Source of the DNA: Styela clava
Lineage: Eukaryota
Length of the DNA stretch: 64,000 nucleotides
Assembly: GCF_964204865.1 (NCBI RefSeq)
Contig: NC_135258.1
Location: 8,866,001 to 8,930,000 of the forward strand
Reading direction: 5' to 3'
This document shows, piece after piece, positions 21,473 to 59,069 of the stretch; position 1 is the stretch's first letter; each line of letters starts with the position of its first letter. Under the pieces are notes generated by a model that saw only the letters and a program-made list of their open reading frames with translations, did no database searches and had not been told where the DNA came from. Both the position numbers and the translations under genes were made by a program.

Positions 21473-24324
21473 TTATTTGCAAATGTATTTAGGAACCAAT
21501 CTATCACACTTGCACTCCAAGCCATTGATTGACACACAATCACACCTGCTTTGTCTCACTTTGATCAACTTTGTTCTGTAACCGCGACCGCAACATAGAT
21601 GCTCACAACTTCCGGGTCCAGTTCTGGTTACGTTACATTCTCTAGAACGTGTCCCGACAATACCAGCTTCTACATTTTCAATACAATAATCAGGAGATGC
21701 TGAGAGATACACAAGTTGGGAATTGTTGAGTGATATTTCTACCTCCCCGTGAAAAATTTCACGACCGGAAATCTCTATTTTGCATCCAACAAGATTTTAA
21801 GCCATTGTCTTTTCCATAATACCTGCACATTCGTTTTGATGTCTTCACCACTGTCTGTACAGAAAAATGAAGTTTTGTTCATCACATTTATATTTAATAA
21901 GTTCAAAGAATGAAATATTATCTTGTTAAAATTTGATAAAAATTAAGTAATTCAGTATTTATATGAAAAACATTTCAGAAGATCAGAGTTCTGTTTAAAA
22001 TTCGTTACAATTAACTTTTAATTTTCAAAATCCTATTGAATAAAAAGAGTAAAGAGCGTCTCACCAGTCTTCCTACTTTATTGTTATGAGCAAACATCAA
22101 TTGCTTTGGGTCAAGTTCTCGCATCTTTCTTTTTCCATCGAGAAAATATTTTACCAAATTGCTCACAAATCCGCTATATGAAGCGTATGTAGTCTACAAA
22201 AAATAAAATTTATGATAAGCTTATATAATTTTCAAAGTACAATAGGTGCAATTAGACTTGTGAAAATAAACACAATACCTTGGGGTACATTTTTCTTTTG
22301 AGTCGAATGAAATGTAAATTTTAACAAAAATTAAATATGATTTCAGGACGCCTATAATATTCATGTTGAAGGGAAATTTTCAATAATGAATCCGAGAACC
22401 TTGTTTTACCAAATATGCAACATTAGGGTGTAGCAATCAATTGTACCCAGCATTCGAAATTATATGCTATGGAAGTAATTTTATTTTTAACGTAATAATC
22501 ATAATCGATCACAATTGATATGATCCGTTTTCAAAAGATGTACAGTTTTATTAATTGATAACAATATGTTATATCATCCTCAAATATCTTACCAAATTTC
22601 CAGTGTAATTTGCAATTTCCGAATGCGGACAAAATTTGTTGTAAGGAAGAAGAAAGTCCTCACATGCCCTTGAAATAGAATGCACAACGCCAGCAGCAGT
22701 TATTGCTTGAGCGAATGCCATTTCTCTTGTACCTAAATAGAATGTTCACTAAATTTCAGAGTGACAACCAAATCACTTAAATGTCTCAGAGATCCACACA
22801 CTACAAATCCAAAACTCTACTGATATTAAATAAATATGATCTGGTGGTGGCTGTGGTGTCTAACGATGAACAATAACTCATTTAATCCTGAAGATATTAA
22901 TAAGATGATGAGCCTTTGAGTACGATGATACATGATTTGTAGCAAACATTGAATGCACCGTCTACTGTTCGAGCAAAATGCATTCAGCATTGATTATTGA
23001 AAAAGCAATACGACGAGTTACCAGGATCTAATACGCAATCAAACCTTAAGATTTTAAATAAAGAAAAGCAAAAAAAAGAGGAAAATATTTTACGCGAATC
23101 TGCGAATGTTCCAAAAATTGCTTTGTTCTTCACTGACGGACACTTCCAGCGATTGTTACGGAATTGATATTGACATTCAGAAATTCCGTTTCTCGCTCCC
23201 TCGCTTACATATTTCATGAGGGGTTTTCTTTTTCGCACCATTTTCTTTGATAGTTGGTAAATCTATCCATTAGATGACAATTTGGAACATCACTTTTCAG
23301 CATATCGTAAACAGAATCTTGAGCCACAGACCTGTACAAAGCAATGTATTATTGAAAAATTAGAAATCGAACAAAATGACATTAAAAATCGGATGTATTC
23401 CGTCGTATGGAGTTTATTTCCAATCACATAGAATTTAGAAGGAATTATAATTACTTCGAATAAGATCTTGCATTGTCAATAATAGGATTCATTATCCAAA
23501 ATTTAAAACAAAGGAAGAAACGCTCTATTTTTTTGTTATTATTGGACATGTTTAGTGGACATACGATCATTTCAATATTTTGTTGTTGTTCTTGTTAATT
23601 TTCGTCTTCATCATTATAAAATCGCTTTTCTATTCGACTACTGGACCAATTGCTTTGAAATTTTCAGTGAGTAAAGATTATATTTTTCGTTAGAAGGCTA
23701 TTACTTTCATTTATCGTTTTTGTGTGCTATGACGCCAACAAAATTTGCCAATATGTGGCGCAACGTGTCCATATATTTGAGCTCTGCTCTCTTGTTTGAT
23801 ATGTTATTAGACCCACAGAGTAGAGTGCGACATGCATGTTTCCCAACCGGGCAGGAATAACTCCTCATTTGCCATTGTTGTGGAGGAATTGTGTTTTGTA
23901 TTTGCTGTGGTATCATTGGTTTTCTTCAGTTCATAATTAATATAATATTTATGCCCACATTATAAACTACTTAAATTTTACAAAGGCAACTTGCGTACAA
24001 CCCTAGCTTAATACCCATTAATAATTGAATAAATGAATATTTTTATGTAGTGTGAGGGAGAAATAACAATTTAAAAGCAGGAGAAATTTGACAATAAAGG
24101 TCGGAAAGCACTGCGGTAATGCTATCCAAAATGAATAAATGTTTAATTATATATATATCATTTAGTATTAAATAGATTTTTGTCGGCGGTATTTTCAAAT
24201 ATAATACAGTTATTTGTCCATGAAAAAAAGCTTACCACCAACGGTCGTACACTCCGCTGCTCAAAATCAGGGGGAAGATGAGAACACATAGCAGGAAAAA
24301 ATAATTTTTGTTGGAATTTCCCAT
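21473..24324 (-). pseudogene. Wnt: Divergent Wnt-family gene copy A, 5 exons, two frameshifts
   Basis: Exons 24324-24236 (signal peptide ...YDRWW), 23331-23094 (ECQYQFRNNRWKC), 22732-22593 (TREMAFAQAITAAGVVHSISRAC), 22193-22065 (HNNKVGR), 21854-21473 (SPDYC...CCGRGY). Exon 2 is 238 nt against 239 nt in copy C (1-nt loss near 23225). Exon 5 has a frameshifting deletion near 21765. Confidence 0.85.
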
Positions 24325-26037
24325 CGTTTTTCGACCACCCTATCTCCTTAAGAAAAATCCTATAATTTGGTGAGAATAGCACAAGATCGAATATCATAAT
24401 TTTTATGTTTTATATTGCAAATACGTTTTTAGTGACAAATTCTATGTTTAAACTGTTCCAAAGCGTCAAGATAACATAATTCCATTGTTTAGCACTAAGC
24501 ATTTGTAGTTGCATGCAGTGTCGAGTTCTCAATTTCGAATAAAATTTTAGGATGGGTTTGGGAAGAAGTTTAAAACCAGTAAATGAACTATTTGTTTAAA
24601 ACATTATTCTGGTCATCAGTTGACAATAAACCTCGAGCGTTTCGTCGCGGATAGTCCGATATCCTCCTTATCTGTCGTTAAATCATTAGAAGTTTAACCG
24701 AAACGATTTATCTACCGATTGTTACACATCTCATTTATTTGCCTATGTAAAGTACGAACTCTCCTTTGATTGGGATACCTATAACATTTTCTAAGCTCTT
24801 GCTTTGCTAAGGCTGACCGAGACCTTCAAAATCACTATATGTTTTTATCCAGAAGATTTAATCCATATGTTCATTCTATTCCTATATGCCGATCACTCAT
24901 GTTAATCATCAATATACTGCGATTTTCTTATACCTTCCCTTCTACTTCCATCACTACCTATCTTTAGAAAAACCTGCTCATAATGTATAAATTCTCCTAA
25001 GTGTTGTTATTAATGTTGCTAATATTTGAATGATGTTATTTATCTACTGTAACTACATTAATATCTGGTGTTTAAGGATATGTAATACTACCCAATCTTT
25101 TTTTCACGAATATATCTAGCAATTTGTATGAGATATGGAAATATGCCACAATCATATTTTTGCAGCAATCACGTAACTCGACTTCGATTATTTCCGCAAA
25201 GAGATTTATTTTTCTGCTGAGCTTTTAAGCATACTCGTTTCAGGTTCACTCAATAAAAATATTATATGTTAGGAAGTCGATCTAAAAATTATCACGTCAA
25301 TTGTATATGTCCCAAACATAGTGATGCAAAATAGGTATTGCTTTTTTACTTTCATTTTTCCAATTATTGGCGATATTGCTTCCTGTATCATTTTATAATT
25401 TTATTCTGCAAATATTATATAATTTTCGACATTGCTGGAAAAAATGGTGCTGAGTCAGAAAAACAAGGGAATTTTTAAAGGAAAAGTTTTGTTTGCAAAA
25501 TTTTCCTGTCGCGTTTTATTTCTAATATGAATCTGAAAACTGTAATAAGATTCGTTTCTTTTGTTTAACCCAATATAAATTGACTTTGCGTTGTTATTCT
25601 ACAAAAAATAAAAACAATTTAATTCTGACCTGAAAAGTAAAGATGACGGTAACAAAGGTCATATTCCAAAATAACCCAATTATCCAGATTTTCAAGGCTT
25701 CATTATTTTATGGCTATTTAAAGTAGCACGTGTTTAACTAGTGCTCCTTTCCCTCTGTCTTTGCGTTAGTTGATCCATATGCAGTGAATATGGCAAGAGT
25801 GAAAACGTCTATATTAAATAGTTCATTTCAATTTCCCAAATTTTCTTTCGTATTGCTTCGTCTGGCCTAAATCATACTTCCCCAGACAAGAAATTTAAAA
25901 CAGTTATGTTGGAAACATATAAGAAAATGTATACTATAATATTTCCATGTTTATGAGTTATGTTACTTTGCTTGGAAATGCAATGATGCACTGACGACTC
26001 AGTGATGCACAGACAATTTGTACTTTGACGATATACT

Positions 26038-26206
26038 AATCAATCAATCAATCATCGTTTATTCGTCAACACAATTAATATAAATATATCACGGAAATAT
26101 GACAAGATATAAAGTAAATGAAAAAAGACGAACTTCATATCTGTGACAGGAGTCGCGAGGGACCACGAAAGGTCTTCGAGCAGCGACACCCACGATGCTG
26201 GTTCAG
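26038..26206 (-). mobile_element. Second LINE/SINE 3'-end fragment, same family as 14888-15052
   Basis: (CAAT)n tail and a core shared with 14888-15052. Confidence 0.5.
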
Positions 26207-28006
26207 CTTAATAAATAAAATTAGTTAACGCCTATGCTTTTAATTATTATTATTCATAAAACATAAAAAACGAGACACCAAAACAATTGAATAATATGTG
26301 TATATAATAAATTTGAAAAACATGAAAACCATCAAAGAGCTAAAGAACTAAAAGAAAACTTTTCCACTGCATTGACTTTGATCAGAACTGAACAAATATA
26401 GCACTCAGTTCAATTAATTTCAGGTCTGTAACCGACAAACTCGAACGTTATTTTATTGAATTGCTGAAGCAAAAAGATAAAATACCTCAAATACTCCAGG
26501 GGACTGTGAAACTGTGAATACGACCACGGCGTTTATCTATTAGTAAAATAAAAAAAACACGAGTACTGTATAACGTACATTCGTTCATTTCCAATTCAAG
26601 CTTGTATTCAACGGAGTCGTAAACAACGGCCAAACGTATAGCTTTCCTTCATAACTTAGGACTTTTCTGATTGCAGTTATATTGCTTCCTGAATACCTGT
26701 GTTTACCCAGAAACAATCTTGTATTAAAATTTTGCCCTTTTCAAAAATATAAAACATAAAAACACGGAGATTTCCAACGGTAGTTGTTGACATGTAATAG
26801 CCATTGATTTTTTTTTCAATGGAATTATTTGAAAAAACAAGAACAAGATTAACAACAATAATATAATAATAACAGAACGATCCATATGTAACTTTGTGTA
26901 CAAAAATGAAACAACAAATTATCAGTGTGAAAATCAGACGGTAGGCTAATCTGGGATTAAATTACTGACTGATATTAACCCAACTTGCGAGAGTACAGCA
27001 AAGTTTAAGAATCAAGTTCAGCAGCAATACAACCAAATTAAATTTGTTTGCAATCCTACATTTTTATTTTTCGAGACGGAAAAAGACAAACTATAATTGC
27101 AGACACAAGTAACCTCTTTTGGCGTTTGTGGTTTAATTGATATTCATAAAAATCGTTGGCAGTCCCACGACTCCCACATGACTTTCGTCTTTTGCTTTAG
27201 AAGTGATGCAGGCATTTGTTGGTAACAATTTCGAAATTGGGAAAAGTGTTTGAAATCTTCATTTACCGCATGATTTTTTTAAAGTTATTATACGGATTGA
27301 TTATTTGAATATTTTCGTTCCAAATTGAATTAAGCTATTGAATAATGCCAACATTGGAATGCGGATATAATTGTAGGCCGAATTGGGCAATTTCGTAAGT
27401 AGGTGTTGTACATTGAACATTTAAAACAAGTTTTCATTATTTGCCTTTAATTTATATTTACGATTTGGTGTAATTGTCAAGAATATGACTAAGCAGCCAT
27501 TTGGGGACAAATATAAAATATTCTTAGCCAACTCGTCCGACACAGACCGCAATTCTACATTGCGACACAGGCGTCGCACATAGGATACAAATTTAAAAAG
27601 ATTGCCGGGATTGCTGTAGAAAAATAAGTTGTATTTAGACTAGAATAATAGATATTAGAATTTTATATAAAGTAGATCATGCTTGGGGATAAGTTTTATA
27701 TTAATTTAATTACTTGGTTTTTATCTTAGAAACAAGGTCGTTATAGACTGTTACAATCGCTTCTGTCACGACTGATAGTGCTCGGTCCTGATGTCAGTTT
27801 CAGGGTCGACTGAATTTATTCTGGTTTACTCTGTCGCAAATAATAACAGTTCATATATCTCTAAACCAGTATATATTAAATTTTGATGTTCTTTTTTTAA
27901 TCGCATAATTGCTTTATGCTTAAATCAATTAGAAGCGAAATAAGCGTATTTATTTACCTCCTATTTACCATTTGAATCTGGTAGTAATTTTTTTCATGTG
28001 AGCACA

Positions 28007-31000
28007 ATGCCGAGTTTCTATTCAGCTTGTGTTGTTCTCATTCCTGTACTTCTATCCACAATGGTTTTGAGCAGAAACGTGCATGACCGTTGGTGGTAAG
28101 ATTTTTCTTTCTATAAATTTAAGAACCATTGCACTTAACTAGTTGCAGTGTACGTAATTAGTTGTTATGTTTTATTGGCGATGCAAAACAAAAACCTTCT
28201 TCTTTTAACCAATTCGTCACTGCTGGAGAGAAGAGCTCATACGACAATGTAAAGACATGATGACTATTTAGCTAATGTCGAATCGTATTTCACCTGCATG
28301 ACTATGAGCAAATATTATTTCGGACTATAAAAGTTAACAAATAGTTTTTTTTCGATCCATGGTTTTAATTGATAATTTTTTATTCAAGAAAAATTTCTTC
28401 AAACGACAAATCATATATAACCTACGGATATAATAAGTACAACTTACTTTATAAACACTTTTTTACAAAATAATTTTCAGGTCCGTCGCACAAGATTCCA
28501 TTCGCGATATGGTACAGAGAAATAGATCTATTTGTCAAAAAGTAGAAGGATTCACACAATACCAAAAGAGATGGTGTAAGACGAATAAAGCATTTATGAA
28601 GTTTGTAATCGAGGGAGCGAGACAAGGAATCTCGGAATGTAAATATCAGTTTCGCAATGATCGATGGAATTGCTCAACAGAAGAAAAAAAATGGATATTT
28701 TATGGAAAATTTATAAAATATCACGGTGACTATCTAGTGAAATATTTGAACATTTCTTTAGTTTCAACGCTTAAAACGCAACTGACACTGAGTTAAGTCG
28801 GCTGTGATGATATAATGTAACCTAATAACTAACACTATTCCAATTATTGGGAATGAAATTGACCCATATGAATCGTTTTGTTGTTATGTTGTTTTTGTGA
28901 AAAAATCGTCTTTTTTCTTCAACTACTCGACCATTGAAGATTGTTGTTGTCGCTAGAAGGGTATTTTGTTTTTTTAAAAATATTTGTTTGAATTTGTTTT
29001 TCACTTCAAAGTTTTATGTGATGAACTCATAAAAATTAGCCGTTTTCAAGCAGTCTGTTACATTCAATGAAAAAAATTGAATTTAAACTTAATTGAAATT
29101 AAATTTTAGTATAATAAATTTTTTAATTTCATTTTTTTGTTCTAATTTTTCCTATTCAAAATGATTTGCATTTCAGGATCTCGAGAAAGCGCATTTGCAC
29201 ATGCTATAACTGCTGCTGGCGTAGTACATGCCATATCTCAAGCTTGTGCAACTAATAGTCTTCCACCCGAAGCTTGTCCCGATGTAAGTTTAATTGGATT
29301 TAGTTTATGACATTTTCTATCGCCCCCTCTTTCACGATGAATGACAAAACAACATGCTATAGGTTATAAGTATCACAGATATCTACAAACCTACAATGTG
29401 ACTATAAATGACTTTCTTATCATTATTATTCTTTTACGAGTCTTTTAGCAATCAATTTTAGTGGACACGAAATGCGTCATCAAAATTAAAAATTGCGCAT
29501 TTTGTGGCGGTTCCGCGTTAGTGGCCGTGTCCATATAATTTGCTGCCTAGGAATATTTAACACAAATTCGAGTCATTCCGCTAACGAAGTTTTTTATTTA
29601 CATAAATTCAGTCTTGGATCAGTATTTAATTAAAAAAGGCGTGTTCGTGGAAAAATGATGTCATCCGACGTTTTGCCTTTTTTGGTTCATTTTCATAAAA
29701 AATCAAAAATAATCCATAATTCATAATAATATGGATTGATGTTAATTTACAAACGGTTGTATGTATGAATAAATCTCATATAACTATGCATAAATATTGC
29801 TTCAAAATAATAATAAAACAATTTATTATCAATTTCCATTAAGGATGGTCTGTACAGCAAATTCGCAAGTGGGTTAGTGAAATATTTTCTTAACAATAAA
29901 AGACACAGACGAGGACTGGATCGCCGACTAGTAATGGACGATCACAATAACAAAGTTGGGAGGATGGTATGTAATGTAAACACGTATATTTTTAGTTTTT
30001 ATTCTGATTTGCTGTCATTTCTATTAGTGAAATTTGCTCGTAAACAGGTGAGTAATTTGAAAATATTAGAAGATTTGAAAACTATTGTACTGTTTATGAA
30101 TATTTTATTACAAAATCCAGAAAAACAGCTGTTATGCTTTTTTTTTAATTCTTACTCAAATTAAACATCATCTCATTTGCTGACCTTCAACGTTTTTATG
30201 AAACCTCGAATAATAATACGAATGGCTCACGAATTTTGTTTCCTTTCTGGATTCCTATTCAAATGAAATGCAAAATTGGATAAACCTTTATAAACCGTTA
30301 GGATGTGAGATATTTACAGAATAATGAGTAAATATTGTTTCAAAAGTTCCAAGCTAAGCAGGGCTTATATGTAAAAATTACAGTCGTCTTTTGAAATTCG
30401 TAGAAGGCGAGAGACTACTTATCTGGCCAAGTTTTGACATTATAGAAAATAAGATTAAAAAAACTTTCTTTGTTAATGAAGGCGTTTTATATCTTTTCGA
30501 ATCAATTTTGGGCGCTCCAGAAGTGTGTGCGTAAAGGGACTGAAACCTATGGGCAGGGGTATATTCACTTGGTTAACACAGACAGCCACCGAACTTGTGA
30601 TAGAAATAAAATAAGGAAAATTGGAGAAAAATTATGGCCTAACCCTAACCTGGTACACACACTATACGGGAGTATCCAATTTTGGACGCGAAAAAACTCG
30701 GCAATCATTGAGTATAATTAGCTTATTATATTCGTCCGTCTGGTTTTGACAGGCTGTTGTAAATACGTCCGAGAAAAAGTGCAAATGTATCGATGTACCG
30801 GAAAATATGGAAATATGCAACAAAACATTCTGCTGGGAGGATGTTGAGGATTTTCGAGTAATTGGCAATACATTGAGAAAAGCATATTTTAATGCAAGTC
30901 AATTTTGGATACCGCGAGACGAAATTGCATCTGGGAATCTGAATACCAAACTCAAAACCGATCTCAAATCTAACACCGAGCTTGTATATTTTAATGGTTC

Positions 31001-31217
31001 TCCAGACCTTTGCTACCGTGTACCGAGAAACAACTATTATGGAACTCGCTCCCGTGTATGCAATGCTACAGGGTCGGAGTTCGGAAGCTGTGAGTATTTG
31101 TGCTGCGGTTATGGCTACGAAGCGAAAATGTTTGAAGTTGTCGAATTATGCAATTGTGACACTCAAAATAAATGCTTCAGATGTGTGCGCATGGAACAGC
31201 GCCATGTATGTAAATAA
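28007..31217 (+). CDS. Wnt: Divergent Wnt-family protein copy B, 5 exons, 342 aa, no acylation serine
   Basis: Exons 28007-28095, 28481-28725, 29177-29283, 29844-29966 and 30753-31217 sum to 1029 nt in frame. Signal peptide plus WW. Motifs ECKYQFRNDRWNC, SRESAFAHAITAAGVVHAISQAC, HNNKVGR, LVYFNGSPDLC, CCGYGY. Subfamily not assignable by eye. Confidence 0.92.
30511..30676. mobile_element. MITE derivative in Wnt B intron 4, related to 20802-21037
   Basis: Shares AAATAAGGAAAATTGGA.AAAAATTAT.GCCTAACCCTAACCTG. 8-bp TSD CAATTTTG. Confidence 0.75.
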
Positions 31218-32540
31218 TCAACCCCATCAAATATATATACCAAAATGTAAGAAATCCTACTACTCAATATCAATAATTTTTTCCGTTACAAATACAACTG
31301 CAACAAATTTTTTTTTTTCTGTTTACCTATATTTATTTTAAATTGATTTCATTCTCTCGATATATATATATTATTTGACCGACACCATGCAATATCAATA
31401 CACAAAAACACTCAGCACAGAAGGATTGAATGTATGTATTTAGGCAGAATAAAGTATCAATGGTATTGTTAACATCGTTCTGAAGTCGCCATTGTCATAA
31501 GAGTGATATATTGGCCACGTTGTGTGTGATAAATATCTATAAGATCTAATTAAATGTTTGAAACGTTTGATATTTGAAATGAAAAATTATCTTTTGCATA
31601 AAGAAAAATAAAATAATATTCGTGTATGATTCTGCATATGATGGTATGTAATATAGATTGAAATTGTTCATGACTTGCAGTTTTTTTTACGTACTGGTAT
31701 TGAGTAGCGGTTTTGAGTCACACCAGATTGAATCTGTCTCGTTCAATACAATAGGAATATAAATTTATGGATTAAATATATTTATATTAGCTTGGGAAAG
31801 AGTTAGAGCCAATTCAAAAGTTTCGTAAGACAAGATGGCAGTATCTATAATTCTATAACCTCTATTGAAGTCGACAACAAACTAATAAAAAAATAATTTT
31901 GGGCATCAAAAGGAATAGGGGAAATAATATTAGGGAAATGTTCTTCAGAGTATTCTAGCCAAATAGAATTCAATCATACACTTCTATAAGCTATGCTTAA
32001 AGCCTAAGGATTAAATGGTAGACAATTTTTTTTTTTTTTCAAAATCACCCATGCAAAATGAACCCAGAAAATCGGCCCAACAGGATAGGATTTTGATAGT
32101 AATTCAATTTTTGCCATCATCCTTAATTCGACCTCCCATACTCGCGTGACTTTGATATCGACCTAATGAACTAACTACTTTACTGTATCTATACTGCATC
32201 CTGATTGCGATACCATCATTACTTCCGTATGCCATATGATGAGATTGACTTATATATATAATAGATGGGAACGATTCCAATACCCTAATTTTAAGGCTAT
32301 CAGGAAGTGCGTCTATTCATTCATATAATGTCACTCATATTCAAACGCAATGTTTCGCGTATTACTTCATTCATTAGCGCTGTTAGAACAATAAAAGTCA
32401 ACTCGAATGGATTTTTGGACTATGCGCTGTATTAGCCATTAAGCCTCTTGTTTCTTAACACTGCCTAAGATTATGCATCAGCTGGATCCAACTAAAAATC
32501 AGCAATTTGCCTTTTATTAAGTAATTCTTTTTTCATCACA

Positions 32541-36800: not shown

Positions 36801-37229
36801 GCATGTTACGTTATCACTTCTGTCAAATACGTCATCGACTTAGAAAAGATACTTTGAAACTATTGATCGTTTTACTTAATTGCTGCTTATGCTGTTATTG
36901 TTTGTATCAAATTAGCTAATGAGAAATTTGAATCAATATCTTTATGCCACAGTCATTTTTATATGATGCATTTTTATATATTAATAAATGTTATACCTAA
37001 TGCCATATTCAGCCATTGATCCAGTGATTCAGTATAGCATTATGCAAATATGACAAGAGTCCGTAGAATTATTTTCATACGGTGTAAGTAGTATCTTCTC
37101 TAAACAAAATGGAGAAGCATTTATCGCCTCCAAATGTTATTTCTTTCGTATATGTCATTTACTTAGCAACTCAGAAACTTCAAAATAATATTAAATCTGT
37201 AGTCAGTTAACTACTGCTTACTTTAACAG

Positions 37230-37660
37230 GCCGTTGTCAAGACATCGCAAACCATGTGTAAATGCCATGGTTTAAAGGAATCTTGTAATTTTAAAACATG
37301 CTGGAAACAAGTGCGCGATTTTCGTGTTGTATCAGACGAATTGAAAGAGGCATACGACAGAGCAATCGAAGTTGAAAAGTGGGGAACTAGTCGCTAAAAG
37401 ATTGATGAGAAATCCAACAGATTCTGATCGTATATACTGATCATATAGAATAGACTATCGTGAACGGAATGCCGAAAGTGGAATATTTGGAACAGTCGGA
37501 CGCGAATGCGATGTCAGAACCATTGGAATGCACGATTGCAACATAATCTGTTGTGGGCGCTGATACAAAACCACCAAGTTTCGTGTTGATGGAATTTGTA
37601 TTGGCAGCACAACTGGCAGACCCTAAATTTGCAGTCGTATTGACACTGGACTCATTTTTT
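37230..37660 (+). pseudogene. Wnt: Wnt relic: inverted copy of the last exon of Wnt copy C
   Basis: AVVKTSQTMCKCHGLKESCNFKTCWKQVRDFRVVSDELKEAYDRAIEV followed by frameshifts and stops. Flanking intron sequence (about 36900-37229) matches the reverse complement of about 56443-56770. Confidence 0.9.
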
Positions 37661-37875
37661 GCTCACCAAAATTCAGTTTTGAAATTCTTCCAACACAAAA
37701 TTATCGACTTTGGGTTTTGTCTAATTCCTACATTTCAGTTGACAGATAAATGTTATTGGAACTCTGAATTTTAACCTAAACCTCATTTAATTGGCACAAT
37801 AGTTCTATGTTGTTGATATATATCAGAAAATAGATGACAACCAGTGATACAGTATTTCCTCTTCCTGAATTGTTG

Positions 37876-42304: not shown

Positions 42305-42312
42305 TATAAAAA
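42305..42312 (+). promoter_or_regulatory. TATA box of the peptide gene
   Basis: TATAAAAA about 30 nt before a probable short non-coding exon that ends at a GTGAGA donor (42368). AP-1-type TGAGTCA at 42034. Confidence 0.55.
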
Positions 42313-42678
42313 GGGTGAATAAACATCTTTAGCATCACTTCACTTTACGAAGACGAAGAAGATTCGGGTGAGATTTTTGAAAATTCGTATTTTCTATGTA
42401 ATAATTTCTATGTGAGTTTATCATTGTTTTTACCTTTGTTAACACGAATCTTACAAACAGCCATCACAATAAAGAATTTCAAATTCGAATTTATTTTTCT
42501 GTTTTTATCACGAAGTCCGTAATATTCCGAGTTGTTTTTAATTGGAATTCGTTTTACTTCCAAAAATTAACAAGGATTATTTTCTAAGAGCCAAACAAAC
42601 CTTGCTTTTTCGAGTTTAATTATCTAAAACGAAAATTCTTATTTAATTTAATATCATTCAATTTCAGAAAACAAAATC

Positions 42679-43895: not shown

Positions 43896-44710
43896 GGAGT
43901 GATGACGAAGAGTGACGACGAAGAGTGAAAAAATACATGTCATAATATTAATTTGCCAAACACATCTTGTCTGATCATTATATATATTTTAAATAAGTTG
44001 ACAAATAACAAATATAAATTATCAATATTGATTTCGTTTTGTTAGCTGTTGTTTTGTCTCACTCTTTGTTGTTTGAATAAATGAAAGTAATCTGAAGATA
44101 CGTGTTTATCAATCAATAAAATATTCGAGTTTTACAACATTTTAAACAGGTAACACTCACAGTAGCAAAAAGTAATAACGGCGTTTTTTGTTGTTGTTGC
44201 ACGACTCTATTTCATATAGCTAACGCGAGAATATCAATTGACACTACATTGGATCGCCATTAGGAATAATATCAACGCGCACTGAAAATTAAGTCGAACA
44301 ACCAAAGACGCACAAAGTAAATCGAAAAAAGTGTTTATTGCTCAGAAAAACTTGCTACTGGGGTCAAAAAAGTGTATTTCAATTTAGCTTTGCCATGTAA
44401 TCCAAAAATCTCGCAAGGCAAAATTAAATACCGGTAATAAAAAACCTATTTAGTTTTTTCACTGTAAGTATTGCACTATTTTGAATGTTTGCTGGAAATG
44501 CACGAACAAACCTGCGCCAATTCTCTATGCATTATACCGCCATTTCAAATATTTTTACCGCGATATCTCACGAAGACAAGATTGAATCTGCTCCAGATTT
44601 TGCATGTACATTCATCATATGTCGTACCAGAAGCCTATTGATTCGTATAATTAGCGAGTTATTAATTAATTAATGATGGGACACAAGGTGTCACTATGGA
44701 GTAAGAGCGC

Positions 44711-47700: not shown

Positions 47701-50700
47701 GCCAAAGTTTAATGGGTAAAGAACCATATATACCAACGGTGGGCAATTATACGGCTCCTCTCGCTAACATATAATTTTATCCAAATTCCACTATTGCAGA
47801 ATCTGTAGTGTAACAGTTTTTTTTTAATTTATCAAGCGATTGAAGAAGTTTTCATTTATGATTGAGACAAATTATGTTTTAGTATGAAAATTGTTGTAGC
47901 GTGGACTTCAAATTTAAATCAGTCATGCGACAAATCTCAGGTGACAATGGTCACATGTTTATTGCTGCGTTGGCAGTATTACAAAAAACAATATGTCGGC
48001 AATTCAACATTTTCGTCTGAACCGATCCGAATAATTCACTATTCGATTCTATTTAAATATTCGATTCGAAATTCTCAACTACAGGAACCAGATATTCGAA
48101 TCTACCACAATACTATGTGCTCATCAAAAAGTGTGTGCGACGATCAATGACTTTTGTGGAGACCATTAGGCCAGCAAATATTCAACCTTTTAAACATGCA
48201 ATGATTTAAAATTACAATATAGTTATTGCAGTTTGAAAATTAAACTCTAAAAGTTAAACTGTTAATAAAACCCGTTTACGAATAGATGTAACTTTGTCAT
48301 CAAATACCATATGGCAGCGATTTCCAACGGGTGCGCCTCGGCGATTTGCTCATCGAGCTCCGAAAATTACCAGTATTGTGTTAAGCATAACTAATATAGG
48401 ATTAAATATTTTACACATTGTATTTATGAAATATATTTTATTGTTTTTTAATTTCATCTGCTGTGTATATGAACCAGTGAATTCATTCCCGTTTTTTGTC
48501 GTTTACTTTCTGTTACATGATGTCTGCTTTATTGTTTCGAAACGTAACGTTATAGGTAAATATATGCTGAGCCGAGGCTACCGAACTTGAGTGATTTTTA
48601 GTACAGGGATTCAGAGGAAAATCAGGAAGAGATGTGGAAAAAGAGTTAAAATCGCTTTTATTCTTTAGGCATACATGTTTACCAACTTTAAGAAGCATAT
48701 GATACACATCAACCATTACAAAATTGCAATTTAATTAAAAACAGCAAATTTTTTCATGTAAGTGCCCCTTAAGTTTTTTTCCTTCGTAATTCGGCGCACG
48801 AACAAAAGTTGATAGACTGCTTCCATACGGTATTACTTATAAGTTTGTTTATTATATTAAAATCGGAAGAAACTTTGTTATCACCGTGTTTACAATTTAA
48901 TGGGCAATTTCCCGTAATTAGTCGGAGACAATACAACTTTGTACTCAACCACTTCCGTAAGATTATGACTCGGTGTTACGTTACTTATTTTGGGTATTCA
49001 TAAATTCACAATATGGAAATTTCTTAACACGATTTGTTTTTGTTTTTTTCTATAATGCCAAGCATGATTATCAGTTCATCACTTACAGTCTTACATAATT
49101 GGAAGTTTTCTCACAAACACAACTTCATGCACTGAACGTTGGAGATTTTGGTTATTTTAATTACAAGCTGTAACTTAAACATAAACATTGATGAAGATTT
49201 TAGTTAAAATAAAATAAATTGAATATTATATTTTGATCAAATAAAAATTTTACTACCATATTGATTGGTAATGGGTGTTCCGAGCAAAACTTCGAGCGAA
49301 TGAAATTATTACACTGGTAATAATACAGTTGCTAACAAATAAATTGCCATAGAACTTGTAAAAGCAGTTGTAACTCATGTGGTGAAAGTTGTTATCTATA
49401 CTTGTAGACACATTTGGTGAATAATAAAAGTAAGGTGCGCTCCGTTGCTAAGACTCTGTTTTTGCAAATCTGCGCAGGCGTATTCAGAAGTCATAAAGCA
49501 GACTAACATTTCTATTAGAACAATGGTTCCCAACCTTTTTTGATATTTCTCTCTCGACGTATTTTTAAGCTCTTAATTTTTTCCCCGCTACATATAAAAA
49601 CTGTTTGTATAAGGTATATATATATTTAACGGAGCATTTGTTCTAGCTTTGTGTAACCTGCACTCTGTTATAATGGAACTAAAATAAAAATATTAATAAT
49701 ACCACATGCTAACAGGAGAGCTATGCTTAAATATATGGACACGTAACAGCAAATACTACAGTCTACAAATATATTGACACCAAGCGAAGCAGTACTGCAG
49801 TAGTTCACCTTATCTTTAGCATTTCCGGTACCGGTAAACTCAAAATACTTCCGAGTTTCGAGTAGCGAGGATAAGCAATCTGTCTGAGTGATGTATTTTA
49901 CGTTTCCAGTAATTTATGTATCTGGAGGACCAAATACAAGAAAAAAGTTACATACAATTATATATCTCCCAAGTATTCGAGATTCGATTCGATTCGAAAA
50001 AAATATTTGATCTGATTCTGAAATCATCAGGTATTCGAAAATGCCCAGCCCTAACAACTAGTCATGTCAACCCCCCGATCTAAACGAGACAAAAACAAAC
50101 AAAAAATTTCATGTTATGTTTATGTGCTTACAGAGTCTCATATTTCACAAAACGGAACACGAAATATCTCCCCATAACCGTTTTGGGGTATCCCCCTAAC
50201 TTTCGATCGATAAGTCTTCGGTCTCTGACCGATATTCTCCTTTAGCCAATTGATATGATATCCAAGCTTTGAGCATACAAAACATCTGTTGTCTCCTACA
50301 TGTGAAAACCTGAGTGAACTCAGAGTTTTCTTATAGAGTAAAATTGTCATCAGCTACCTAGCATTCCTCACATGTTTGTCACATACCAAACGTGAACTTA
50401 AACTACCATGATGTGAAACAGCTCCACGGAACCAAGAGAATACATGGCAGCCAAAGTTTAATGGGAGAAGAACCATATATAACAACGATGGGCAATTATA
50501 CTGCTCCTCTCGCTAACATAGAATTTTATCCAAATTCCACTATTGGAGAATCTGTAGTGTAGAAGTTTTTTTTTAATTCATCAAGCGATTGAAGAAGTTT
50601 TCATTTATGATTGAGACAAATTATGTTTTAGTATGAAAATCGTTGTAGCGTGGACTTCAAATTTAAATCAGTCAAGCGACAAAAACAGGTCACAATGGTC

Positions 50701-51986
50701 ACATGTTTATTGCTGCGTTGGCAGTATTACAGCTTGGTTGCGGTTAGTCTCAGTCACAGTGCGATATGTCCCGCACCGCTTGGTCTACGTATTGCCCACA
50801 CTTTCAAAAACTCACAGATAGGATGGAAACACGCAAGTCAAGTACTTTCGCATCAAATACTTCGTAATATCATTTGTTGTTATTATACGTTTGGGTAAAT
50901 TCTCTGTTCAAGGTATTCTAATATTAATAATTTCAAAAATTATGCGACTCTCACATATTTCTGACTTGATGCATGCGGCTGTTATACTGAAAAAATTTGC
51001 CCACCCCTGATATATATATAAATTCATGCATTTTTTTCATTATGTTCGCGTGTTTTATTATGTTAGCGTGTTATTATATTCATTTCAATTGTGAGGCATT
51101 TTGGGTTGCGAATGTGCGTTTGTGAGATTTAATAATAATTATCTGCCGATTGGTTGTTTCAGAATCGGATTGAATATTTTTTTTTCGAATCGAATCGAAT
51201 ATCTTATTTAATTTAACTCTATTATACTGTAATACTGAAAAGATAAAATCACTCAGTTACTTCGCTGAGCGTTAAAACATAATGATAAACATGTTTGAGC
51301 CATAACTAAATAAAAAAAATAAGTTTATTTGTCCAAATTGCTTTCTAAATATGAGGCTTCAATAAAGAAAATTGTGAAATTCCCCTCGATCTTTGGCGGA
51401 CAGAAAGAAAAAACAATATGTCGGCAATTCAAAATTTTCGTCTGAACCGATCCGAATAATTCACTACTCGATTCTATTTAAATATTCGATTCGAAATTCC
51501 CAGCCCAAGAAACCAGAGATTCAAATCTATCACAATACTTTGCGCTCATCAAAAAGTCTGTGCGACGTCCAATAACTTTTGTGGAGACTATTCGGCCCCA
51601 AATATTCAACGTTTGAAACATGCAATGTTTTAAAATTACGATGTAGTTATTGCAGTTTGAAAATTAGGCCTCCAAAGTAAAACTGTAAATAAACCCGTTT
51701 ACGAATAGATGTAACTTTGTCATCAAATACCATATGGCAGCGATTTCCAACGGATGCGCCTCGGCGATTTGCTCATCGAGCTCCTAAAATTACCAGTATA
51801 TGTGTTAAGCATAACTAATATAGGATTAAATATTTTACACATTGTATTTATGAAATATCTTTTATTGTTTTTTTTTTATTTCAACTGCTGTGTATATGAA
51901 CCAGTGAATTCATTTCCTATTTTTATTGTTGTTTACTTTCTGTTACATTGTGTCTGCTTTATTGTCACGAAACGTAACGTTATAGG
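44711..51986 (+). repeat. Tandem segmental repeat, about 2.7-kb unit, two full copies and one partial
   Basis: Units start at about 44711, 47431 and 50179 (periods 2720 and 2748) and are near-identical. Much of the unit is homologous to about 39830-42145. Confidence 0.93.
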
Positions 51987-53104
51987 CAGTGGTGGGATTC
52001 GGTATCCGCGTTCGTTGAAAATACCGGCTTTTTCGCGGTATAATTTTCTGTCTCGTAATATTCAATCTATGACAACTACAAGAATTCAAAATGTCTCTCT
52101 ATTTTAATTCATTTGTGTTCAAGGTAACTCGCGGTTGCGGCGACTCACGACAAAATAAACTCATTAGTCATTACCGATCTAAAATACCACGCCAATCCAC
52201 GGACATAATAATGTGTGATCAACTGCCCGATTATATTTAGTTTTGATATATATATATTAAGCTAATGCGAATTCGTTATCGTCGTTGGAAAGATCTGGTA
52301 TAATATCCCAGAAAGTATATTTAATTTAGTACAATAAAAATACATATATAGTATATTTGTAAATAAAAAATACATATTCATCGACTCGAAATCCCCGCGG
52401 TACGCTTTCCGTTTTATTTTTCGTACTTCATAATGCCGCTTTTTCAATCAAGAAATTTTTGGTTGTGGATTCACTTCTTTATTACATCTTTAGCATCTCG
52501 TAGCTGATGATTATATAATAAAACTAACTCGTTTTCCTCACAGCTGTCATAGTTCCATTCAAAAACAAAAAAAGTATCATCGTCTTCGCGGCACAAAAAT
52601 ATATCGAGGAAAATTTCTGATTACGGGAGAATAAACATCGAAATCAAGAATTTTACGACCTAAATAACACGTCACGCTGACGAAAACAATCGAGATTTAA
52701 AGAAAATGCAATCGCAAACGCCTTAGCGACTTAATTTTTCAGCGGTCAAGGGCCGGGAAAACGTCCACATGCATAATAACTATTAAAAATTGAACGCCTT
52801 TTAAATTTACATAAATTCATTTGCAATTCTCCATTTTGTAAACTGTAATTTTGAACTTGGTGGTTGTCCAAATGTATTGGTAGTGTAATTTGGAAACGTT
52901 AGGCAATAGGTCTGTAATTGTTACTTAGTAAATAAACATTAAAGTAAATAATTTTTGCTCAATCAATGCTCAATAGTGATGAAGTAAACAATTGATTGAA
53001 ATTTTACGTGTCTTATGTAAACGTTTAGGCAGAAAATACACCAATGCATAGGTTTATTGCGTATTTAGTTTTACTTAAAAAATAGTTAGACTTTACCAGG
53101 TATT

Positions 53105-53326
53105 GCAAACTGAGCGGAAAAACGAAAATGTATGATGACCACGACAGGCGAAGTGGTACTCCGATGCGTTTTATGCCTAAACAATCTGAGCAACCATGCT
53201 ATGAGACCAACACTCTTGCCCCATCACAAAAACATTTTTTCGAAGCAAAAAGAAGGGGGGCGCGAAGTTTGTAAAATTTTTCAAAGGTGGGGGGGGGGGT
53301 GGCTCAAAAAGTTTAAAAACCACTGC
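53105..53326 (+). mobile_element. hAT Buster/Charlie deletion derivative with a BED-finger remnant
   Basis: Translation RCVLCLNNLSNHAMRPTLL resembles the Buster-type N-terminal motif CVxCxxxLSNxxMKPSKL. Ends in hAT-like AAAGTTTAAAAACCACTG. Left end not located. Confidence 0.55.
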
Positions 53327-53339
53327 TCTATAGCTTCAT

Positions 53340-54525: not shown

Positions 54526-55998
54526 GTTATGGGATAAGTTTGAATGTTTGAATCGGTGGTTTCTCCGTGAACAAAACAACATGCTTGTCAAGTGTGATGA
54601 CCTGTTCTCAATGTTAGGTAATGTAATTTAAAATTTTACAATCTGTTTAACCATGAATTAAAATCTCAATTTTCCACATCATTAGGAAACACACTTGAAA
54701 TCAAAAGTGTGGAATAAAATATTTCCAAGTATTGTCAAAGCTGTGCTTTAGCTATTCTGAAAGGGTAAAATTGAATCTCAAAACTTGGACCACTCATCTC
54801 GACCAAGTGGGATAAAAAGAAGAGATTTTTTGCTAGTTTGGCCAAACACAAAAATATGTTATCCCGGCACATGTACTCCGTGATATAACCGAATGCAATA
54901 TAGACTCTAGATTGTCAAATGTATAATAAAGAAAAAGATTTGCAGATAAAACTTTTTTAAATTTTATGGCCGATTGAAGACTAGTGTCAGTCATGAAAAT
55001 ATGGCAAAATGATTTATGAATTGATATTTATTTATTCAAGCTTTCGCGGGTTGCAAAAAAACTCGCCACGGGCCGCGGTTTGCCCGTTGTATACTAACGT
55101 CATTCAATAGTATACATACTCCACACCGGTCACGAGCTTGCTAGAAAATACATATGGTCACACTGTAATTTATTAATATTGGAATCATGTGTGCAAGATA
55201 ACGCTAATTATCGCTATTGGTTAGATATGTTTACCTGCACATATTACCGAGTGGGTTAAATATTTGACGAGCCTAAATCTACTAAATCTTGCTTAAGTCA
55301 TGGATTCTGATAATCTAGGGCAAATTTGCATAACGCCTGCCAAATTGTTGTTCAATATACTGATCGATTGAAAACTACCGTCATTCATTGACTACCTTCA
55401 GTCATTGCAGTCTGGCGAAATGAATTGTGAAATATTTTTTATCAATTGCGTTTATTTTTTTTCATTTATTTTCGCAGACGAAAAAAAATCGTTGCCCATT
55501 GTCGTACCAATGTCACTCGTATACTTAATACACACTAACTTGAGCTTGCCGGAATGATCCCTAAAAAATCCACATGTGATCAGAAATTCACGAAGACCAG
55601 TATAATCCAATGAGCTACTGAGTCGTGGGTTATATCTCAAACAAGAATCTTTTGGCCAATAAACATAATCAGTTTGTTCCTACGCTACAACATTTTGAAT
55701 TAACTTGAATCGGATACTTTGATCAGAAATAGCGGAAAAGAAATTCAAGCAGAGTAAATGGATTGCATCTCAATCATTTATTGAAACCTATATATCAACA
55801 GGCGGTTTCCGGTCAAATTTCCAACTGTTGAGTGTTTTAACTACATCAATTGTTTCAAACTGTCTGTGTACAATGAAATTTATATACTTACGTGTATTGA
55901 AAATATATATCTATATGTAGGCATCAGACAATACCCCAGGTCGACAATTGGTGTTTCAAAGTTCTTGAAAGCTGAATTTTGGTGAGCAAATAATGAGT

Positions 55999-58900
55999 TC
56001 AATTGCATTCATGTCTAATGTCAATACGACTACAAATTTCGGGTTTGCCAGTTGTGCTGCCGTTACAAATTTCATCAACACGAAACTTGGTGGTTTTGTA
56101 TCCGCGTCCACAGCACATTATGTTGCAATCGTGCATTCCAATGGTTCTCACATCGCATTCGCGTCCGACTGTTCCCAATATTCCTCTTTCGGCATTCCGT
56201 TCACAATAGTTTGGCGATGCTTGCAAGTATATAAGCTCGGAATCGGTTGGTTTTCTCATCAATCTTCTGGCGACTAGTTCACCATTTTTCAACTGTTCAA
56301 CTTCGATCGCTCTGTCGTATGCCTTTTTCAATTCATCTGCTACAACACGAAAATCGCGAACTTGCTTCCAGCATGTTTTTAAATCACAAGAATCCTTTAA
56401 ACCATGGCATACACAAATGGTTTGCGATGTCCTGACAACGGCCTGTTAAAGTAACCAGTATTTAGTTGACTAAAGATTCAATATTATTTTTATGAGTTGC
56501 TGAGTAAATGATATATACAAAAGAAACAATATTTGAGTGCGATTCATGCTTCTCCATTTTATTTAGAGACGATACTACTACTTACGCCGTGAAAAATAAA
56601 ATGAAAATAATTCTACTATTTTGGACTCTATTGTTATAGTTGCATACTGCTGTGTTGAACCCTGCTCTTCGCCTAGGCTGGATGTGACAATAGGTGTAAC
56701 ATTTATCAATATATAAAATGACTGTGGCATATAAACATCGATTCAAATTATTCTTATCTTATTAGCTAATAATAATTGAGTTCTTCAAATAAAATCTTCT
56801 GAGAAGTAGTTAATAAAATGAATAACATCTAGTTCTTTTGAGTAATATACAAAAATATATTATATATACTATCAACCTTTTTTTCTGGCTAAATCAGTGA
56901 ATATGCTGTTGTAAGACATCTAGTTGATATCAAAGTAGTTATCCCTCGTAGCTGATGAAAGCCACTGAATTTTATAAAACAACACCTTCCGCCAAACGAC
57001 ATTGTGTTAGTTATTCTATAATCCATATTATGTGAAATGAACATATCTAAGACAGTATGTGAGATCTAAGACAGACTGATACCAACCATTCTTCCGATGT
57101 TATTGTTGTGAATGTTCATTATTTGTCTCTTTCTTGATGATTTTTTTCGTTTCTGACTATTTATAAAATCCTTCAGCAACTCGCTGGCATGAGAGGCATA
57201 AGGACTATTCTCTCCCCAGTCCTAATAAATACCACATACATAATATTACGTTTTTATACATATCTGGCGAAATCGCTCCGGGAATTATTGAAGATATTAA
57301 CATGTATAATATATTCTGTTTTGATTCATATATATAAATATATATATATAAAATAATTATATGTATATAGGCTCCATTCTCGACAGGGTAAGTTGGGTAA
57401 TTTACGTAGTCACGATAATAATGTTTCATTATTGATGATACAACATTTCAAGAAAAAACTATAAATGTATTGCCCAAGTTCATAGTAGAATTATGAATAT
57501 GAGCCAAGTCCCGACATTTTGCACCCGATGTTTCATACTTTTTTCCATTTTCTACATTCAAAGCAACTATCTTTAAAACGAATGGTCAAGCATTCTAAAA
57601 TGACATTGTTTGTTTTAAGTCAGGATTGCAAGTAGAAGATATTAGGTTTTCCGCTTACACGAAGTTAAGAAGCGAAGGCGATACAATTTTTCTGCCTACA
57701 GTCAATGCTTGCATTAAAAATATATTAACAAAAAAAAACATACCAATACTGCACCCGAATAAACAAGCGGTTTTGGGCATCGACGCTTTGGTAGAAGACC
57801 TTGTTGACAAGCTCTTGCAATTGAATGTACAGCTCCAGCAGCTGTTATTGCACGAACAAACGCCATTTCTCTTGTGTCTGGAATAATTGTAGACTTCAAA
57901 TTGAAGGCAGACATAATTCAAATACAATTTGGTAATCTACAATTTCCGGTCATGTTCAGTTAAATTTATTTATTTGAACTTTTCCCTAGCCATGATTACC
58001 TGGAGTCTACCACTCTACCACTTATACAGAATTCGATTCGTAAATATTTGCTACTCAGAGTAAGTTTGTATGACCTTGTGCGTGACGAAGCTGGTCTTGT
58101 GAGTGATAATCAAAGATTGTTGAGATTTCTTTAGAATTTTCTCGTAAATTTCCAATTAAATTGTATTTATTAAGATAGTTAAATAGTGTGATTGATTAGG
58201 ACTATTGGGCACGGTAGTTCGACGCCCTATATATATATGGCTCTACTCGGGCATTAGAACGTAAATAAAGGCAATAAATTGACACCGACACTGTAGCATT
58301 CCATATCGATGTGCCCCGTGATATCTTCAGGGGAAGTTAGATTATCAGAATACTGAAAGTTTGACTAGTCAATTATTCCATATTAAATAATTGTTATCAA
58401 AGGATTCAGAGTGCCGGATGGTATAGGATCATATTATTCTAATACCAGAGGTTTGGCAATCAGATTTGATTAAAAAATGAAATTGAAATAGCCATAGGGA
58501 AGGAAACAAAAAATAAGAATTTTTTTTTTATAAATTAAGGAAAAGTTATATGAACACACCCAAATCTGTTAGTTTTCCAAACACTGAGCTATCGTTAAAA
58601 GTTGGACAATTCCATCTATGATTGCGAAACTGGTATTGACATTCCGATATTCCCTTTCTGGCCCCTTCACTGACAAAGATCATAAAACTGTCTTTTCGTT
58701 TGCACCACTTCTTTTGAAAATTAGTAAATCCGTTCATGCCATCACATATTGAATCGTTATTTTGAAGCGAGTTGTAGGGTCCATCTCGTGCAACAGACCT
58801 TATAAGAAAATGTACAAATGTTACAAACGCCTGTTACGCACTAATCACTAATTGCAGAGATACAATGGGACTAATTGCGTTTTTTGAAGTCGCAACCTCC

Positions 58901-59069
58901 GTCTGAAGTGTAATGAAGATCATTCAATCTTAAACAATTGTTACACTGTATTATCCATTAGGAAACATAATATTACTTACCACCATTGGCAATGTCCGCT
59001 TTCGCTCAAAATTAAAACAAAAAGAATAGCAGACAGTATAAGCCAACAACCTTCTCGAATAAATCCCAT
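55999..59069 (-). CDS. Wnt: Divergent Wnt-family protein copy C, 5 exons, 346 aa, Lys at the acylation position
   Basis: Exons 59069-58981, 58798-58560, 57877-57744, 57221-57087 and 56442-55999 sum to 1041 nt in frame. Signal peptide. Motifs ECQYQFRNHRWNC, TREMAFVRAITAAG, HNNNIGR, CVCHGLKDSCDLKTCW, LIYLQASPNYC, CCGRGY. Confidence 0.93.

What the first reader, a model, noticed from the sequence alone, without database searches (positions are those of the whole stretch)
21473..59069. Cluster of predicted lipid-free Wnts lacking both canonical Frizzled-contact sites
Seen: the canonical thumb CKCHGxSGSC is replaced by CKCIDVPENMEIC (B), CVCHGLKDSC (C), CKCHGLKESC (relic) and CRYYGKDNG (A). The index-finger CxCxFxWCCxVxC is replaced by CNCDTQNKC (B), CNGSTTGKPEIC (C) and CDCVSINGLEC (A). 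The WxWGGC motif is also gone. B and C are full-length with signal peptides. Known: the Ser (Wnt3a S209 / XWnt8 S187) is palmitoleoylated by Porcupine, and the lipid plus the F/W/CC fingertip form Frizzled sites 1 and 2. Drosophila WntD is the classic non-acylated exception. Inference: a lineage-specific family of soluble, Porcupine/Wntless-independent Wnt-fold proteins that act as decoys or use another receptor.
Basis: partly seen in the sequence, partly recalled or inferred. Interest (0 to 1): 0.87.

Follow-up and report, generated by a model that had tools for sequence, protein, structure and literature searches.

The report
Divergent lipid-site-less Wnt5 paralogs, sea squirt
Inside the known tandem array of Wnt5 genes of the sea squirt Styela clava sits a mirror-duplicated block of fast-evolving Wnt5 copies, three still intact, that have lost the serine where every ordinary Wnt receives its lipid and the fingertip that touches Frizzled, so they are candidates for naturally lipid-free Wnt-fold signals in a chordate.

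Summary
The genome is Styela clava. Gene C is identical to RefSeq XP_039264427.2, 'Wnt-5a-like'.

The window lies inside the Wnt5 tandem array on one contig. Five flanking paralogs are canonical. The divergent genes form an inverted duplication: A(-), B(+), C-relic(+) mirror C(-), D(-), A2(+). D and A2 lie just past the window's right edge.

B, C and D are intact five-exon genes with GT-AG introns and hydrophobic N-termini. A, A2 and the relic are broken.

All six form one clade (100/100) that is sister to tunicate Wnt5. The clade shares three losses:
- the acyl serine
- the disulfide that uses the WGGC cysteine
- the vicinal fingertip cysteines

Cysteines are always lost as known partner pairs.

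B and D differ with omega 0.28 (p about 1e-6) and no indel. Gene C folds as a confident Wnt.

Loss of lipidation and of Frizzled contact is inferred from sequence only. The Wnt5 expansion itself is published. The loss of the lipid site in part of it appears not to be.

The parts
21473..24324 (-). Gene A, A-type divergent Wnt5 paralog, pseudogene. Exon 1 about 24324-24235, exon 2 about 23330-23110, exon 3 about 22740-22600, exon 4 22187-22065, exon 5 21878-21473. Frame changes within 23217-23262 and 21762-21796. About 60 nt of exon 5 are missing relative to A2.
   Evidence: Open frames; Pfam wnt on the exons; comparison with mirror copy A2
28007..31217 (+). Gene B, intact B-type paralog, 342 codons. 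Exons 28007-28095, 28481-28725, 29177-29283, 29844-29966, 30753-31214, stop 31215-31217. Thumb loop without Ser or Thr at 30780-30818. Shortened finger at 31149-31175.
   Evidence: Splice model with GT-AG at all four introns; Pfam; fold of exon 5 with pLDDT 83.7; omega 0.28 against D
36911..37733 (+). C-relic: a copy of the end of intron 4 plus exon 5 of the C type. It has frame changes and a stop, and exons 1-4 are absent. It keeps Lys at the acyl position (37257-37286).
   Evidence: Open frames; 78% identical inverted match to 56770-55915; sister to C in the tree at 100/99
55999..59069 (-). Gene C, intact C-type paralog, 346 codons, identical to RefSeq XP_039264427.2. Exons 59069-58980 (plus a split codon), 58797-58561, 57878-57744, 57221-57087, 56442-56002, stop 56001-55999. 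Lys replaces the acyl Ser at 56386-56415. Finger without four cysteines at 56032-56067.
   Evidence: Exact mapping of P0151 onto the window; Pfam 1.5e-82; AlphaFold pLDDT 90.9; Foldseek best match Wnt3, E 2.7e-21
21051..32520 (.). Left arm of the inverted duplication, carrying A and B. Its mirror runs from 62456 to about 73147 in window numbering, so it leaves the window at 64000 and carries D and A2.
   Evidence: blastn of the region against itself, 81-91% identity, all matches inverted
55915..64000 (.). Part of the right arm that lies inside the window. It carries C and the start of the sequence mirrored from 31852-32520.

Best explanation
The region is a Styela clava-lineage sub-cluster of very divergent Wnt5-derived genes. 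It is arranged as an inverted segmental duplication inside the Wnt5 tandem array that is typical of stolidobranch ascidians.

Before the A, B and C types split, their common ancestor had lost four things:
- the serine that Porcupine acylates
- the second cysteine of the CGC motif together with its partner in WGGC
- the vicinal Cys-Cys of the index fingertip
- the aromatic residues of the index fingertip

Three copies (B and C in the window, D just outside) are kept as intact genes for secreted proteins with the Wnt fold. Three copies (A, A2, C-relic) have decayed.

Inferred mechanism. The proteins enter the secretory pathway through a signal peptide and fold as a Wnt held by 9 (C) or 10 (B, D) disulfides instead of 12. 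They carry no palmitoleate, so they cannot place a lipid in the Frizzled CRD groove (site 1). They also present a remodelled, shorter fingertip at site 2. Like Drosophila WntD, they would then be secreted without Porcupine and Wntless. They would act through some surface other than the classical two-point Frizzled grip, either as modulators of the neighbouring canonical Wnt5 ligands or as ligands of another receptor.

Shown here: gene structure, descent, motif and cysteine losses, constraint on B/D, and the predicted fold. Inferred: no lipid, secretion route, receptor use.
For: Organism and identity: gene C equals XP_039264427.2 'Wnt-5a-like' of Styela clava.

Position: the window is C10:8866001-8930000. 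Canonical Wnt genes lie at 8.81, 8.82, 8.86, 8.97 and 8.99 Mb on the same contig. All five carry the standard thumb, WGGC and finger motifs.

Descent:
- A careful ML tree puts C+relic with (B+D, A+A2) at 100/100. This clade is sister to Styela and Ciona Wnt5 at 82/66.
- An AU test does not reject one clade with all named Wnt5 (p 0.165).
- Intron positions and phases match those of the canonical neighbours.
- The best solved relative of C exon 5 is Wnt5a, E 2.6e-31.

Losses:
- In an alignment of 100 full-length Wnts the acyl column holds 96 Ser, 2 Thr, 1 Cys, and Lys only in gene C.
- B and D have no Ser or Thr anywhere in the thumb loop.
- Every lost cysteine is lost together with its partner in the XWnt8 disulfide map. 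Mature proteins keep 20 (B, D) or 18 (C) cysteines against 24.

Constraint:
- B against D gives dN 0.040, dS 0.14, omega 0.28, Fisher p 1.4e-6.
- There is no indel in 1026 nt, while three of the four introns differ in length by hundreds of bases (intron 2 by only 5).
- All 21 cysteines are shared.
- B and C are only 41% identical, yet both keep open five-exon frames.
- Three allelic forms of C in public records are all intact and all have Lys at the site.

Fold:
- C has pLDDT 90.9 and pTM 0.88. Its best matches are Wnt3, Wnt7a, Wnt3a and XWnt8 at TM 0.64-0.81.
- B exon 5 has pLDDT 83.7, with the finger hairpin at 93-97.

Precedent: WntD is not lipid-modified and is secreted and active without Porcupine or Wntless (PMC2427328). 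The lipid on Ser187 of XWnt8 fills site 1 of the Frizzled CRD (PMC8251975).
Against: - No expression evidence could be obtained. No transcript-derived copy of C appeared in the protein collections.
- Half of the copies are already dead.
- The two pairs that include broken copies give omega values like that of the intact pair: A/A2 about 0.35, C/relic about 0.4. Omega alone therefore does not prove present-day function.
- The placement as sister to all tunicate Wnt5, rather than nested among the Styela paralogs, has modest support and sits on a long branch of 0.87.
- Absence of lipid, secretion route and receptor use are untested.
- C keeps the CxCHG frame and a serine two residues further on.
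Confidence: 0.72

Rival explanations
1. The whole block is non-functional. These are redundant Wnt5 duplicates that lost essential features and are on the way to pseudogenes. B, C and D simply have not yet been hit by a disabling mutation.
For: - Three of the six copies are broken.
- The pairs that include broken copies show omega of 0.35-0.4, no higher than the intact pair.
- No RNA evidence was obtained.
- A Wnt5 pseudogene inside the array is also reported for botryllid ascidians (PMC10542563).
Against: - The losses are ancestral to the three types. Since then the types have diverged to 41-48% identity while B, C and D kept 342-346 open codons and all splice sites.
- In a genome with about 33% G+C a random frame meets a stop about every 13 codons.
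- B and D have no indel in the coding sequence, against large intron indels, and omega is 0.28 with p about 1e-6.
- Cysteines were lost only as partner pairs, leaving even numbers.
- The predicted folds are confident.
Confidence: 0.13
2. The proteins are still acylated and still use Frizzled in the ordinary way. Porcupine would modify another hydroxyl residue in the thumb, for example the serine kept before the third thumb cysteine in C.
For: - C keeps CxCHG and that serine.
- Other Styela Wnts carry Thr instead of Ser at the site, so the position tolerates some change.
Against: - B and D have no Ser or Thr in the thumb loop and have lost the His-Gly.
- The retained serine of C is the second one of the standard motif. 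It is present in 93 of 100 Wnts beside the acylated one and, to my knowledge, has never been reported as an acyl site.
- The fingertip residues that make site 2 are deleted in all types.
Confidence: 0.07
3. The duplication is an assembly artefact: uncollapsed haplotypes or a mis-joined palindrome. On this view the family is half as large as it looks.
For: S. clava is highly polymorphic. An older annotation listed two near-identical C proteins.
Against: - The arms are 9-22% diverged and carry different large indels and different disabling lesions. That is far more than the roughly 2% difference between C alleles.
- The A, B and C types differ by more than 50% in protein, so the family exists whatever the status of the mirror copies.
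Confidence: 0.03

Closest known systems
Stolidobranch ascidian Wnt5 tandem expansion (Somorjai et al. 2018, PMC6060547; botryllids, PMC10542563)
   Same: It shares the order of ascidians, the subfamily, the tandem arrangement, and even a pseudogene inside the array. The five flanking Styela genes are ordinary members of this expansion.
   Different: The main text of the 2018 paper mentions neither palmitoleoylation nor cysteines. Its alignments hold none of six thumb strings I searched for (three taken from the variants seen here and three similar strings). Styela clava was not among its six stolidobranch species. The sub-clade here is far more divergent: 36-41% identical to canonical Wnt5, against 59-72% among the canonical copies.
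Drosophila WntD (Ching, Hang and Nusse 2008, PMC2427328)
   Same: It is a natural Wnt without the acylated serine. It is not lipid-modified, is secreted efficiently, and works without Porcupine and Wntless.
   Different: It is not an ortholog. WntD is the weakest Wnt match in both sequence and fold searches. It is a single arthropod gene, whereas this is a chordate Wnt5-derived multigene clade. The combined loss of the WGGC disulfide and the fingertip Cys-Cys seen here was not compared with WntD.
Canonical Wnt5a/Wnt5b
   Same: Shared ancestry, exon structure, the signal peptide followed by a WW motif at the end of exon 1, the overall fold, and 18-20 of the 24 cysteines.
   Different: These genes have no acyl serine, no WGGC cysteine and no fingertip Cys-Cys. 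The aromatic fingertip residues are deleted. A six-residue deletion is shared in the linker before the thumb, and B and D have a further deletion of about 15 residues.

Membership tests
Wnt family (Pfam PF00110) | Significant match to the family profile | tested here: met
   Exons score E 1.6e-25 to 3e-7. Whole C protein scores 1.5e-82 and 278 bits against a cut-off of 20.3. The match stops at profile position 281 of 305, before the finger.
Wnt family (Pfam PF00110) | Two-domain Wnt fold with thumb and index-finger hairpins | tested here: met
   C has pLDDT 90.9, with hairpins at residues 206-226 and 314-345. Foldseek finds Wnt3, Wnt7a, Wnt3a and Wnt8 at E 1e-16 to 1e-21. B exon 5 shows both hairpins.
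Wnt family (Pfam PF00110) | Serine in the thumb loop that Porcupine palmitoleoylates | tested here: not met
   C and the relic have Lys. B and D have no Ser or Thr in the loop. In A the loop has degenerated. The column is Ser in 96 of 100 Wnts.
Wnt family (Pfam PF00110) | Full set of 22-24 conserved cysteines | tested here: not met
   Mature C has 18 and mature B and D have 20, against 24 in the flanking Wnt5 genes. The losses are whole disulfide pairs.
Wnt5 subfamily | Groups with Wnt5 in a phylogeny | tested here: inconclusive
   The clade is sister to tunicate Wnt5 at 82/66, inside a weakly supported Wnt5-bearing half of the tree. An AU test does not reject one clade with named Wnt5 (p 0.165). 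The stem branch is long.
Wnt5 subfamily | Lies in the Wnt5 tandem array and shares its intron positions | tested here: met
   Canonical Wnt5 paralogs lie on both sides on one contig. Junction positions and phases are the same.
WntD-type lipid-independent Wnt | No lipid on the protein, and secretion independent of Porcupine and Wntless | not testable with these tools
   This needs expression, labelling or mass spectrometry, and inhibitor or mutant tests.
WntD-type lipid-independent Wnt | Orthology with WntD | tested here: not met
   WntD is the most distant Wnt hit: E 6e-7 by sequence and last among the Wnt folds. The genes here derive from Wnt5.

The most novel reading that the evidence does not exclude
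A chordate has evolved, and kept under selection, a small family of naturally lipid-free Wnt-fold proteins that no longer grip the Frizzled CRD at either classical site. They would act as secreted modulators of the adjacent Wnt5 ligands or through a non-Frizzled receptor. This would be a second, independent origin of WntD-like biology and a natural experiment on what a Wnt scaffold can do without its lipid.
Probability: 0.35. Interest if true: 0.78.

Novelty: new variant of a known kind. Interest (0 to 1): 0.6.

Why it matters
Lipidation by Porcupine is treated as nearly universal for Wnt secretion and Frizzled binding, and WntD is the textbook exception. A set of chordate Wnt5 derivatives that lost the acyl site, one core disulfide and the site-2 fingertip, yet kept an open frame, a confident Wnt fold and purifying selection, would give three things:
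- a second natural system for asking what a lipid-free Wnt does
- a concrete functional hypothesis for part of the unexplained Wnt5 expansion in stolidobranch ascidians
- soluble, detergent-free Wnt scaffolds for biochemistry

It also warns that counts of 'Wnt5 paralogs' in ascidians mix canonical ligands with something mechanistically different.

Tried and rejected
- A word-based protein search with B exon 5 found nothing. With C exon 5 it found nothing above 48% identity. With the whole C protein it found nothing above 38% except C itself. These blanks do not show that other ascidians lack orthologs, because even Styela's own exon-sized ORFs are missing from that collection.
I redid the step with coordinates only.
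- The spliced B and D models have no reference, so they were sent to no search or fold tool. They were joined only inside local scripts, from window and locus coordinates, for alignment, tree and dN/dS. Searches and the B fold used single exons by reference.
- I considered a complex prediction of C with a Styela Frizzled CRD but did not run it. A pass would largely reflect memorised Wnt-Frizzled geometry, and a fail is uninformative by the tool's own statement.
- I expected omega near 1 for the pseudogene pairs as a contrast to B/D. It came out at 0.35-0.4, so that contrast does not exist and is reported as evidence against.
- The hemichordate tandem Wnt that was the best foreign hit owes its score to two domains and was not pursued as a relative.
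Full report
**Observation.**
Ten exon-sized open frames on the appropriate strands were scanned against Pfam. Eight match the wnt family, with E-values down to 1.6e-25. The window has about 33% G+C and no N runs.

**Organism and annotation.**
A search of protein representatives with C's last exon returned a 346-residue protein at 99% identity and nothing else above 48%. Its cluster holds Styela clava RefSeq records named Wnt-5-like or Wnt-5a-like. One of them, XP_039264427.2, sits on a contig of the same length as the window's contig. That protein maps onto the window without a mismatch, as five exons with GT-AG introns. Two other allelic forms differ at one to six residues. All are intact and all keep Lys at the acyl position.

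**Gene models.**
- B gives a 342-codon model with the same four intron positions and phases as C, and consensus splice sites.
- A changes frame in exon 2 and again in exon 5, where about 60 nt present in its mirror copy are missing.
- The relic near 37.2 kb is an exon-5 copy of the C type with frame changes and a stop. It has no upstream exons.
- The joined B and D models have no reference. They were used only inside local scripts. All database searches and the B fold used single exons by reference.

**Genomic setting.**
A Pfam-profile scan of the whole assembly places the window at C10:8866001-8930000. It shows Wnt exons at 8.81, 8.82, 8.86, 8.97 and 8.99 Mb on the same contig, plus ten Wnt loci elsewhere. 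The five neighbours were fetched. They encode canonical Wnt5-type proteins with the standard thumb, WGGC and finger.

Just past the right edge lie two further copies:
- D, an intact gene 92% identical in protein to B.
- A2, a broken copy of A.

Self-comparison shows that 21051-32520 and 36911-37733 are inverted copies of 73147-62456 and 56770-55915 (window numbering), at 78-91% identity. The order A(-), B(+), relic(+) is therefore mirrored by C(-), D(-), A2(+). The spacer between the arms contains 2.7-kb direct repeats.

**Descent.**
- A careful maximum-likelihood tree used 41 rows: the eleven cluster genes, ten other Styela Wnts and twenty named references. It unites the six divergent copies at 100/100.
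- Within that clade, C+relic, B+D and A+A2 form pairs, and B+D groups with A+A2 at 99/93.
- The clade is sister to Styela plus Ciona Wnt5 at 82/66, on a stem of 0.87 changes per site.
- Forcing one clade with all named Wnt5 costs 1.8 log-likelihood units (AU p 0.165).
- C exon 5 is closest to Wnt5a among solved structures.
- Together with the position inside the array and the shared intron positions, this makes a Wnt5 origin the best reading. Whether the clade arose before or within the Styela expansion is open.

**What was lost.**
In the alignment with the canonical neighbours, all three types share these changes:
- a changed motif between the first two cysteines
- a single cysteine in place of CGC
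- no WGGC cysteine
- a six-residue deletion before the thumb
- a four-residue deletion that removes the fingertip Cys-Cys and the aromatic residues beside it

At the acyl position C and the relic have Lys, A has a Lys-Asp remnant, and B and D have a loop three residues longer with no hydroxyl residue.

Further type-specific losses:
- C has also lost the second cysteine of the finger CxC and its partner.
- A has also lost the inner thumb pair.

Measured against the XWnt8 disulfide map (my knowledge of Janda et al. 2012), every loss removes both partners of one bond. This leaves 20, 18 and 20 mature cysteines in B, C and D, against 24. Among 100 full-length Wnts the acyl column holds 96 Ser, 2 Thr, 1 Cys, and Lys only in C.

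**Constraint.**
B and D differ at 61 of 1026 coding positions with no indel. Their introns are 9-28% diverged, and three of the four differ in length by hundreds of bases. Nei-Gojobori counts are 31.7 non-synonymous changes over 816 sites and 29.3 synonymous changes over 210 sites. That gives omega 0.28 with Fisher p 1.4e-6. All 21 cysteines are shared. Three of the nine residues between the two inner thumb cysteines differ between B and D, while the finger is identical.

As a caution, A/A2 and C/relic give omega of about 0.35 and 0.4 over 171 and 133 codons. So those copies were constrained for much of the time since the duplication. A low omega does not by itself prove present-day function.

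The stronger argument is depth. The shared losses predate the split of three types that are now 41-48% identical, and three open five-exon frames have survived since.

**Fold.**
With a 100-sequence alignment, C is predicted at mean pLDDT 90.9 and pTM 0.88, with both hairpins in place. Its best matches are Wnt3, Wnt7a, Wnt3a and XWnt8, at TM 0.64-0.81. B exon 5 alone reaches pLDDT 83.7, with the finger hairpin at 93-97.

**Comparison with the literature.**
The tandem expansion of Wnt5 in Stolidobranchia is published (PMC6060547). A Wnt5 pseudogene inside the array is reported for botryllids (PMC10542563). The main text of the first paper does not mention lipidation or cysteines. Its alignments contain none of six thumb strings searched for: three from the variants seen here and three similar ones. 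WntD shows that a Wnt without the serine can be unlipidated, well secreted, and independent of Porcupine and Wntless (PMC2427328). The lipid on Ser187 of XWnt8 fills site 1 of the Frizzled CRD (PMC8251975).

**Limits.**
- Orthologs in other ascidians could not be sought with the collections on hand.
- Lack of lipid, secretion route and receptor use are inferences.

**Verdict.**
The genes are divergent Wnt5 derivatives in a mirror-duplicated block, with three intact and three dead copies. The lipid-free reading is well founded in sequence but functionally untested.

Noticed in passing
window 32541-33887 (+): An intronless 448-codon ORF with several hydrophobic segments. It sits between B and the relic, exactly where the left arm's homology to the right arm stops, and it has no mirror copy. 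It has no Pfam match. The protein-atlas lead is chordate clusters auto-named serpentine receptor, score 0.95.
   Followed up: partly
window 44710-52000: Direct tandem repeats of about 2.7 kb, roughly three units at 90-96% identity, in the spacer between the two arms. More diverged copies lie at 39.4-41.8 kb, and inverted pieces at 53.9-54.5 kb.
   Followed up: no
L009, L010, L013, L016 (other Wnt loci of the same genome): Four other Styela Wnt genes carry Thr instead of Ser at the acyl position of the thumb.
   Followed up: no
L005:1715-2197: In the canonical Wnt5 paralog at 8.97 Mb the second intron is short, in frame and free of stops, so exons 2 and 3 read through as one ORF.
   Followed up: no
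P0002 (Glandiceps talaboti, XP_077998206.1): A hemichordate 692-residue model made of two tandem Wnt units. Both lack the acyl serine (the thumb is one residue shorter), yet both keep the fingertip Cys-Cys. This may be another independent loss of the lipid site in a deuterostome.
   Followed up: no
window 17656-20664 (+): A fragment of a non-LTR retrotransposon with a reverse transcriptase domain, PF00078, E 9e-20. It lies just left of the duplicated block.
   Followed up: no
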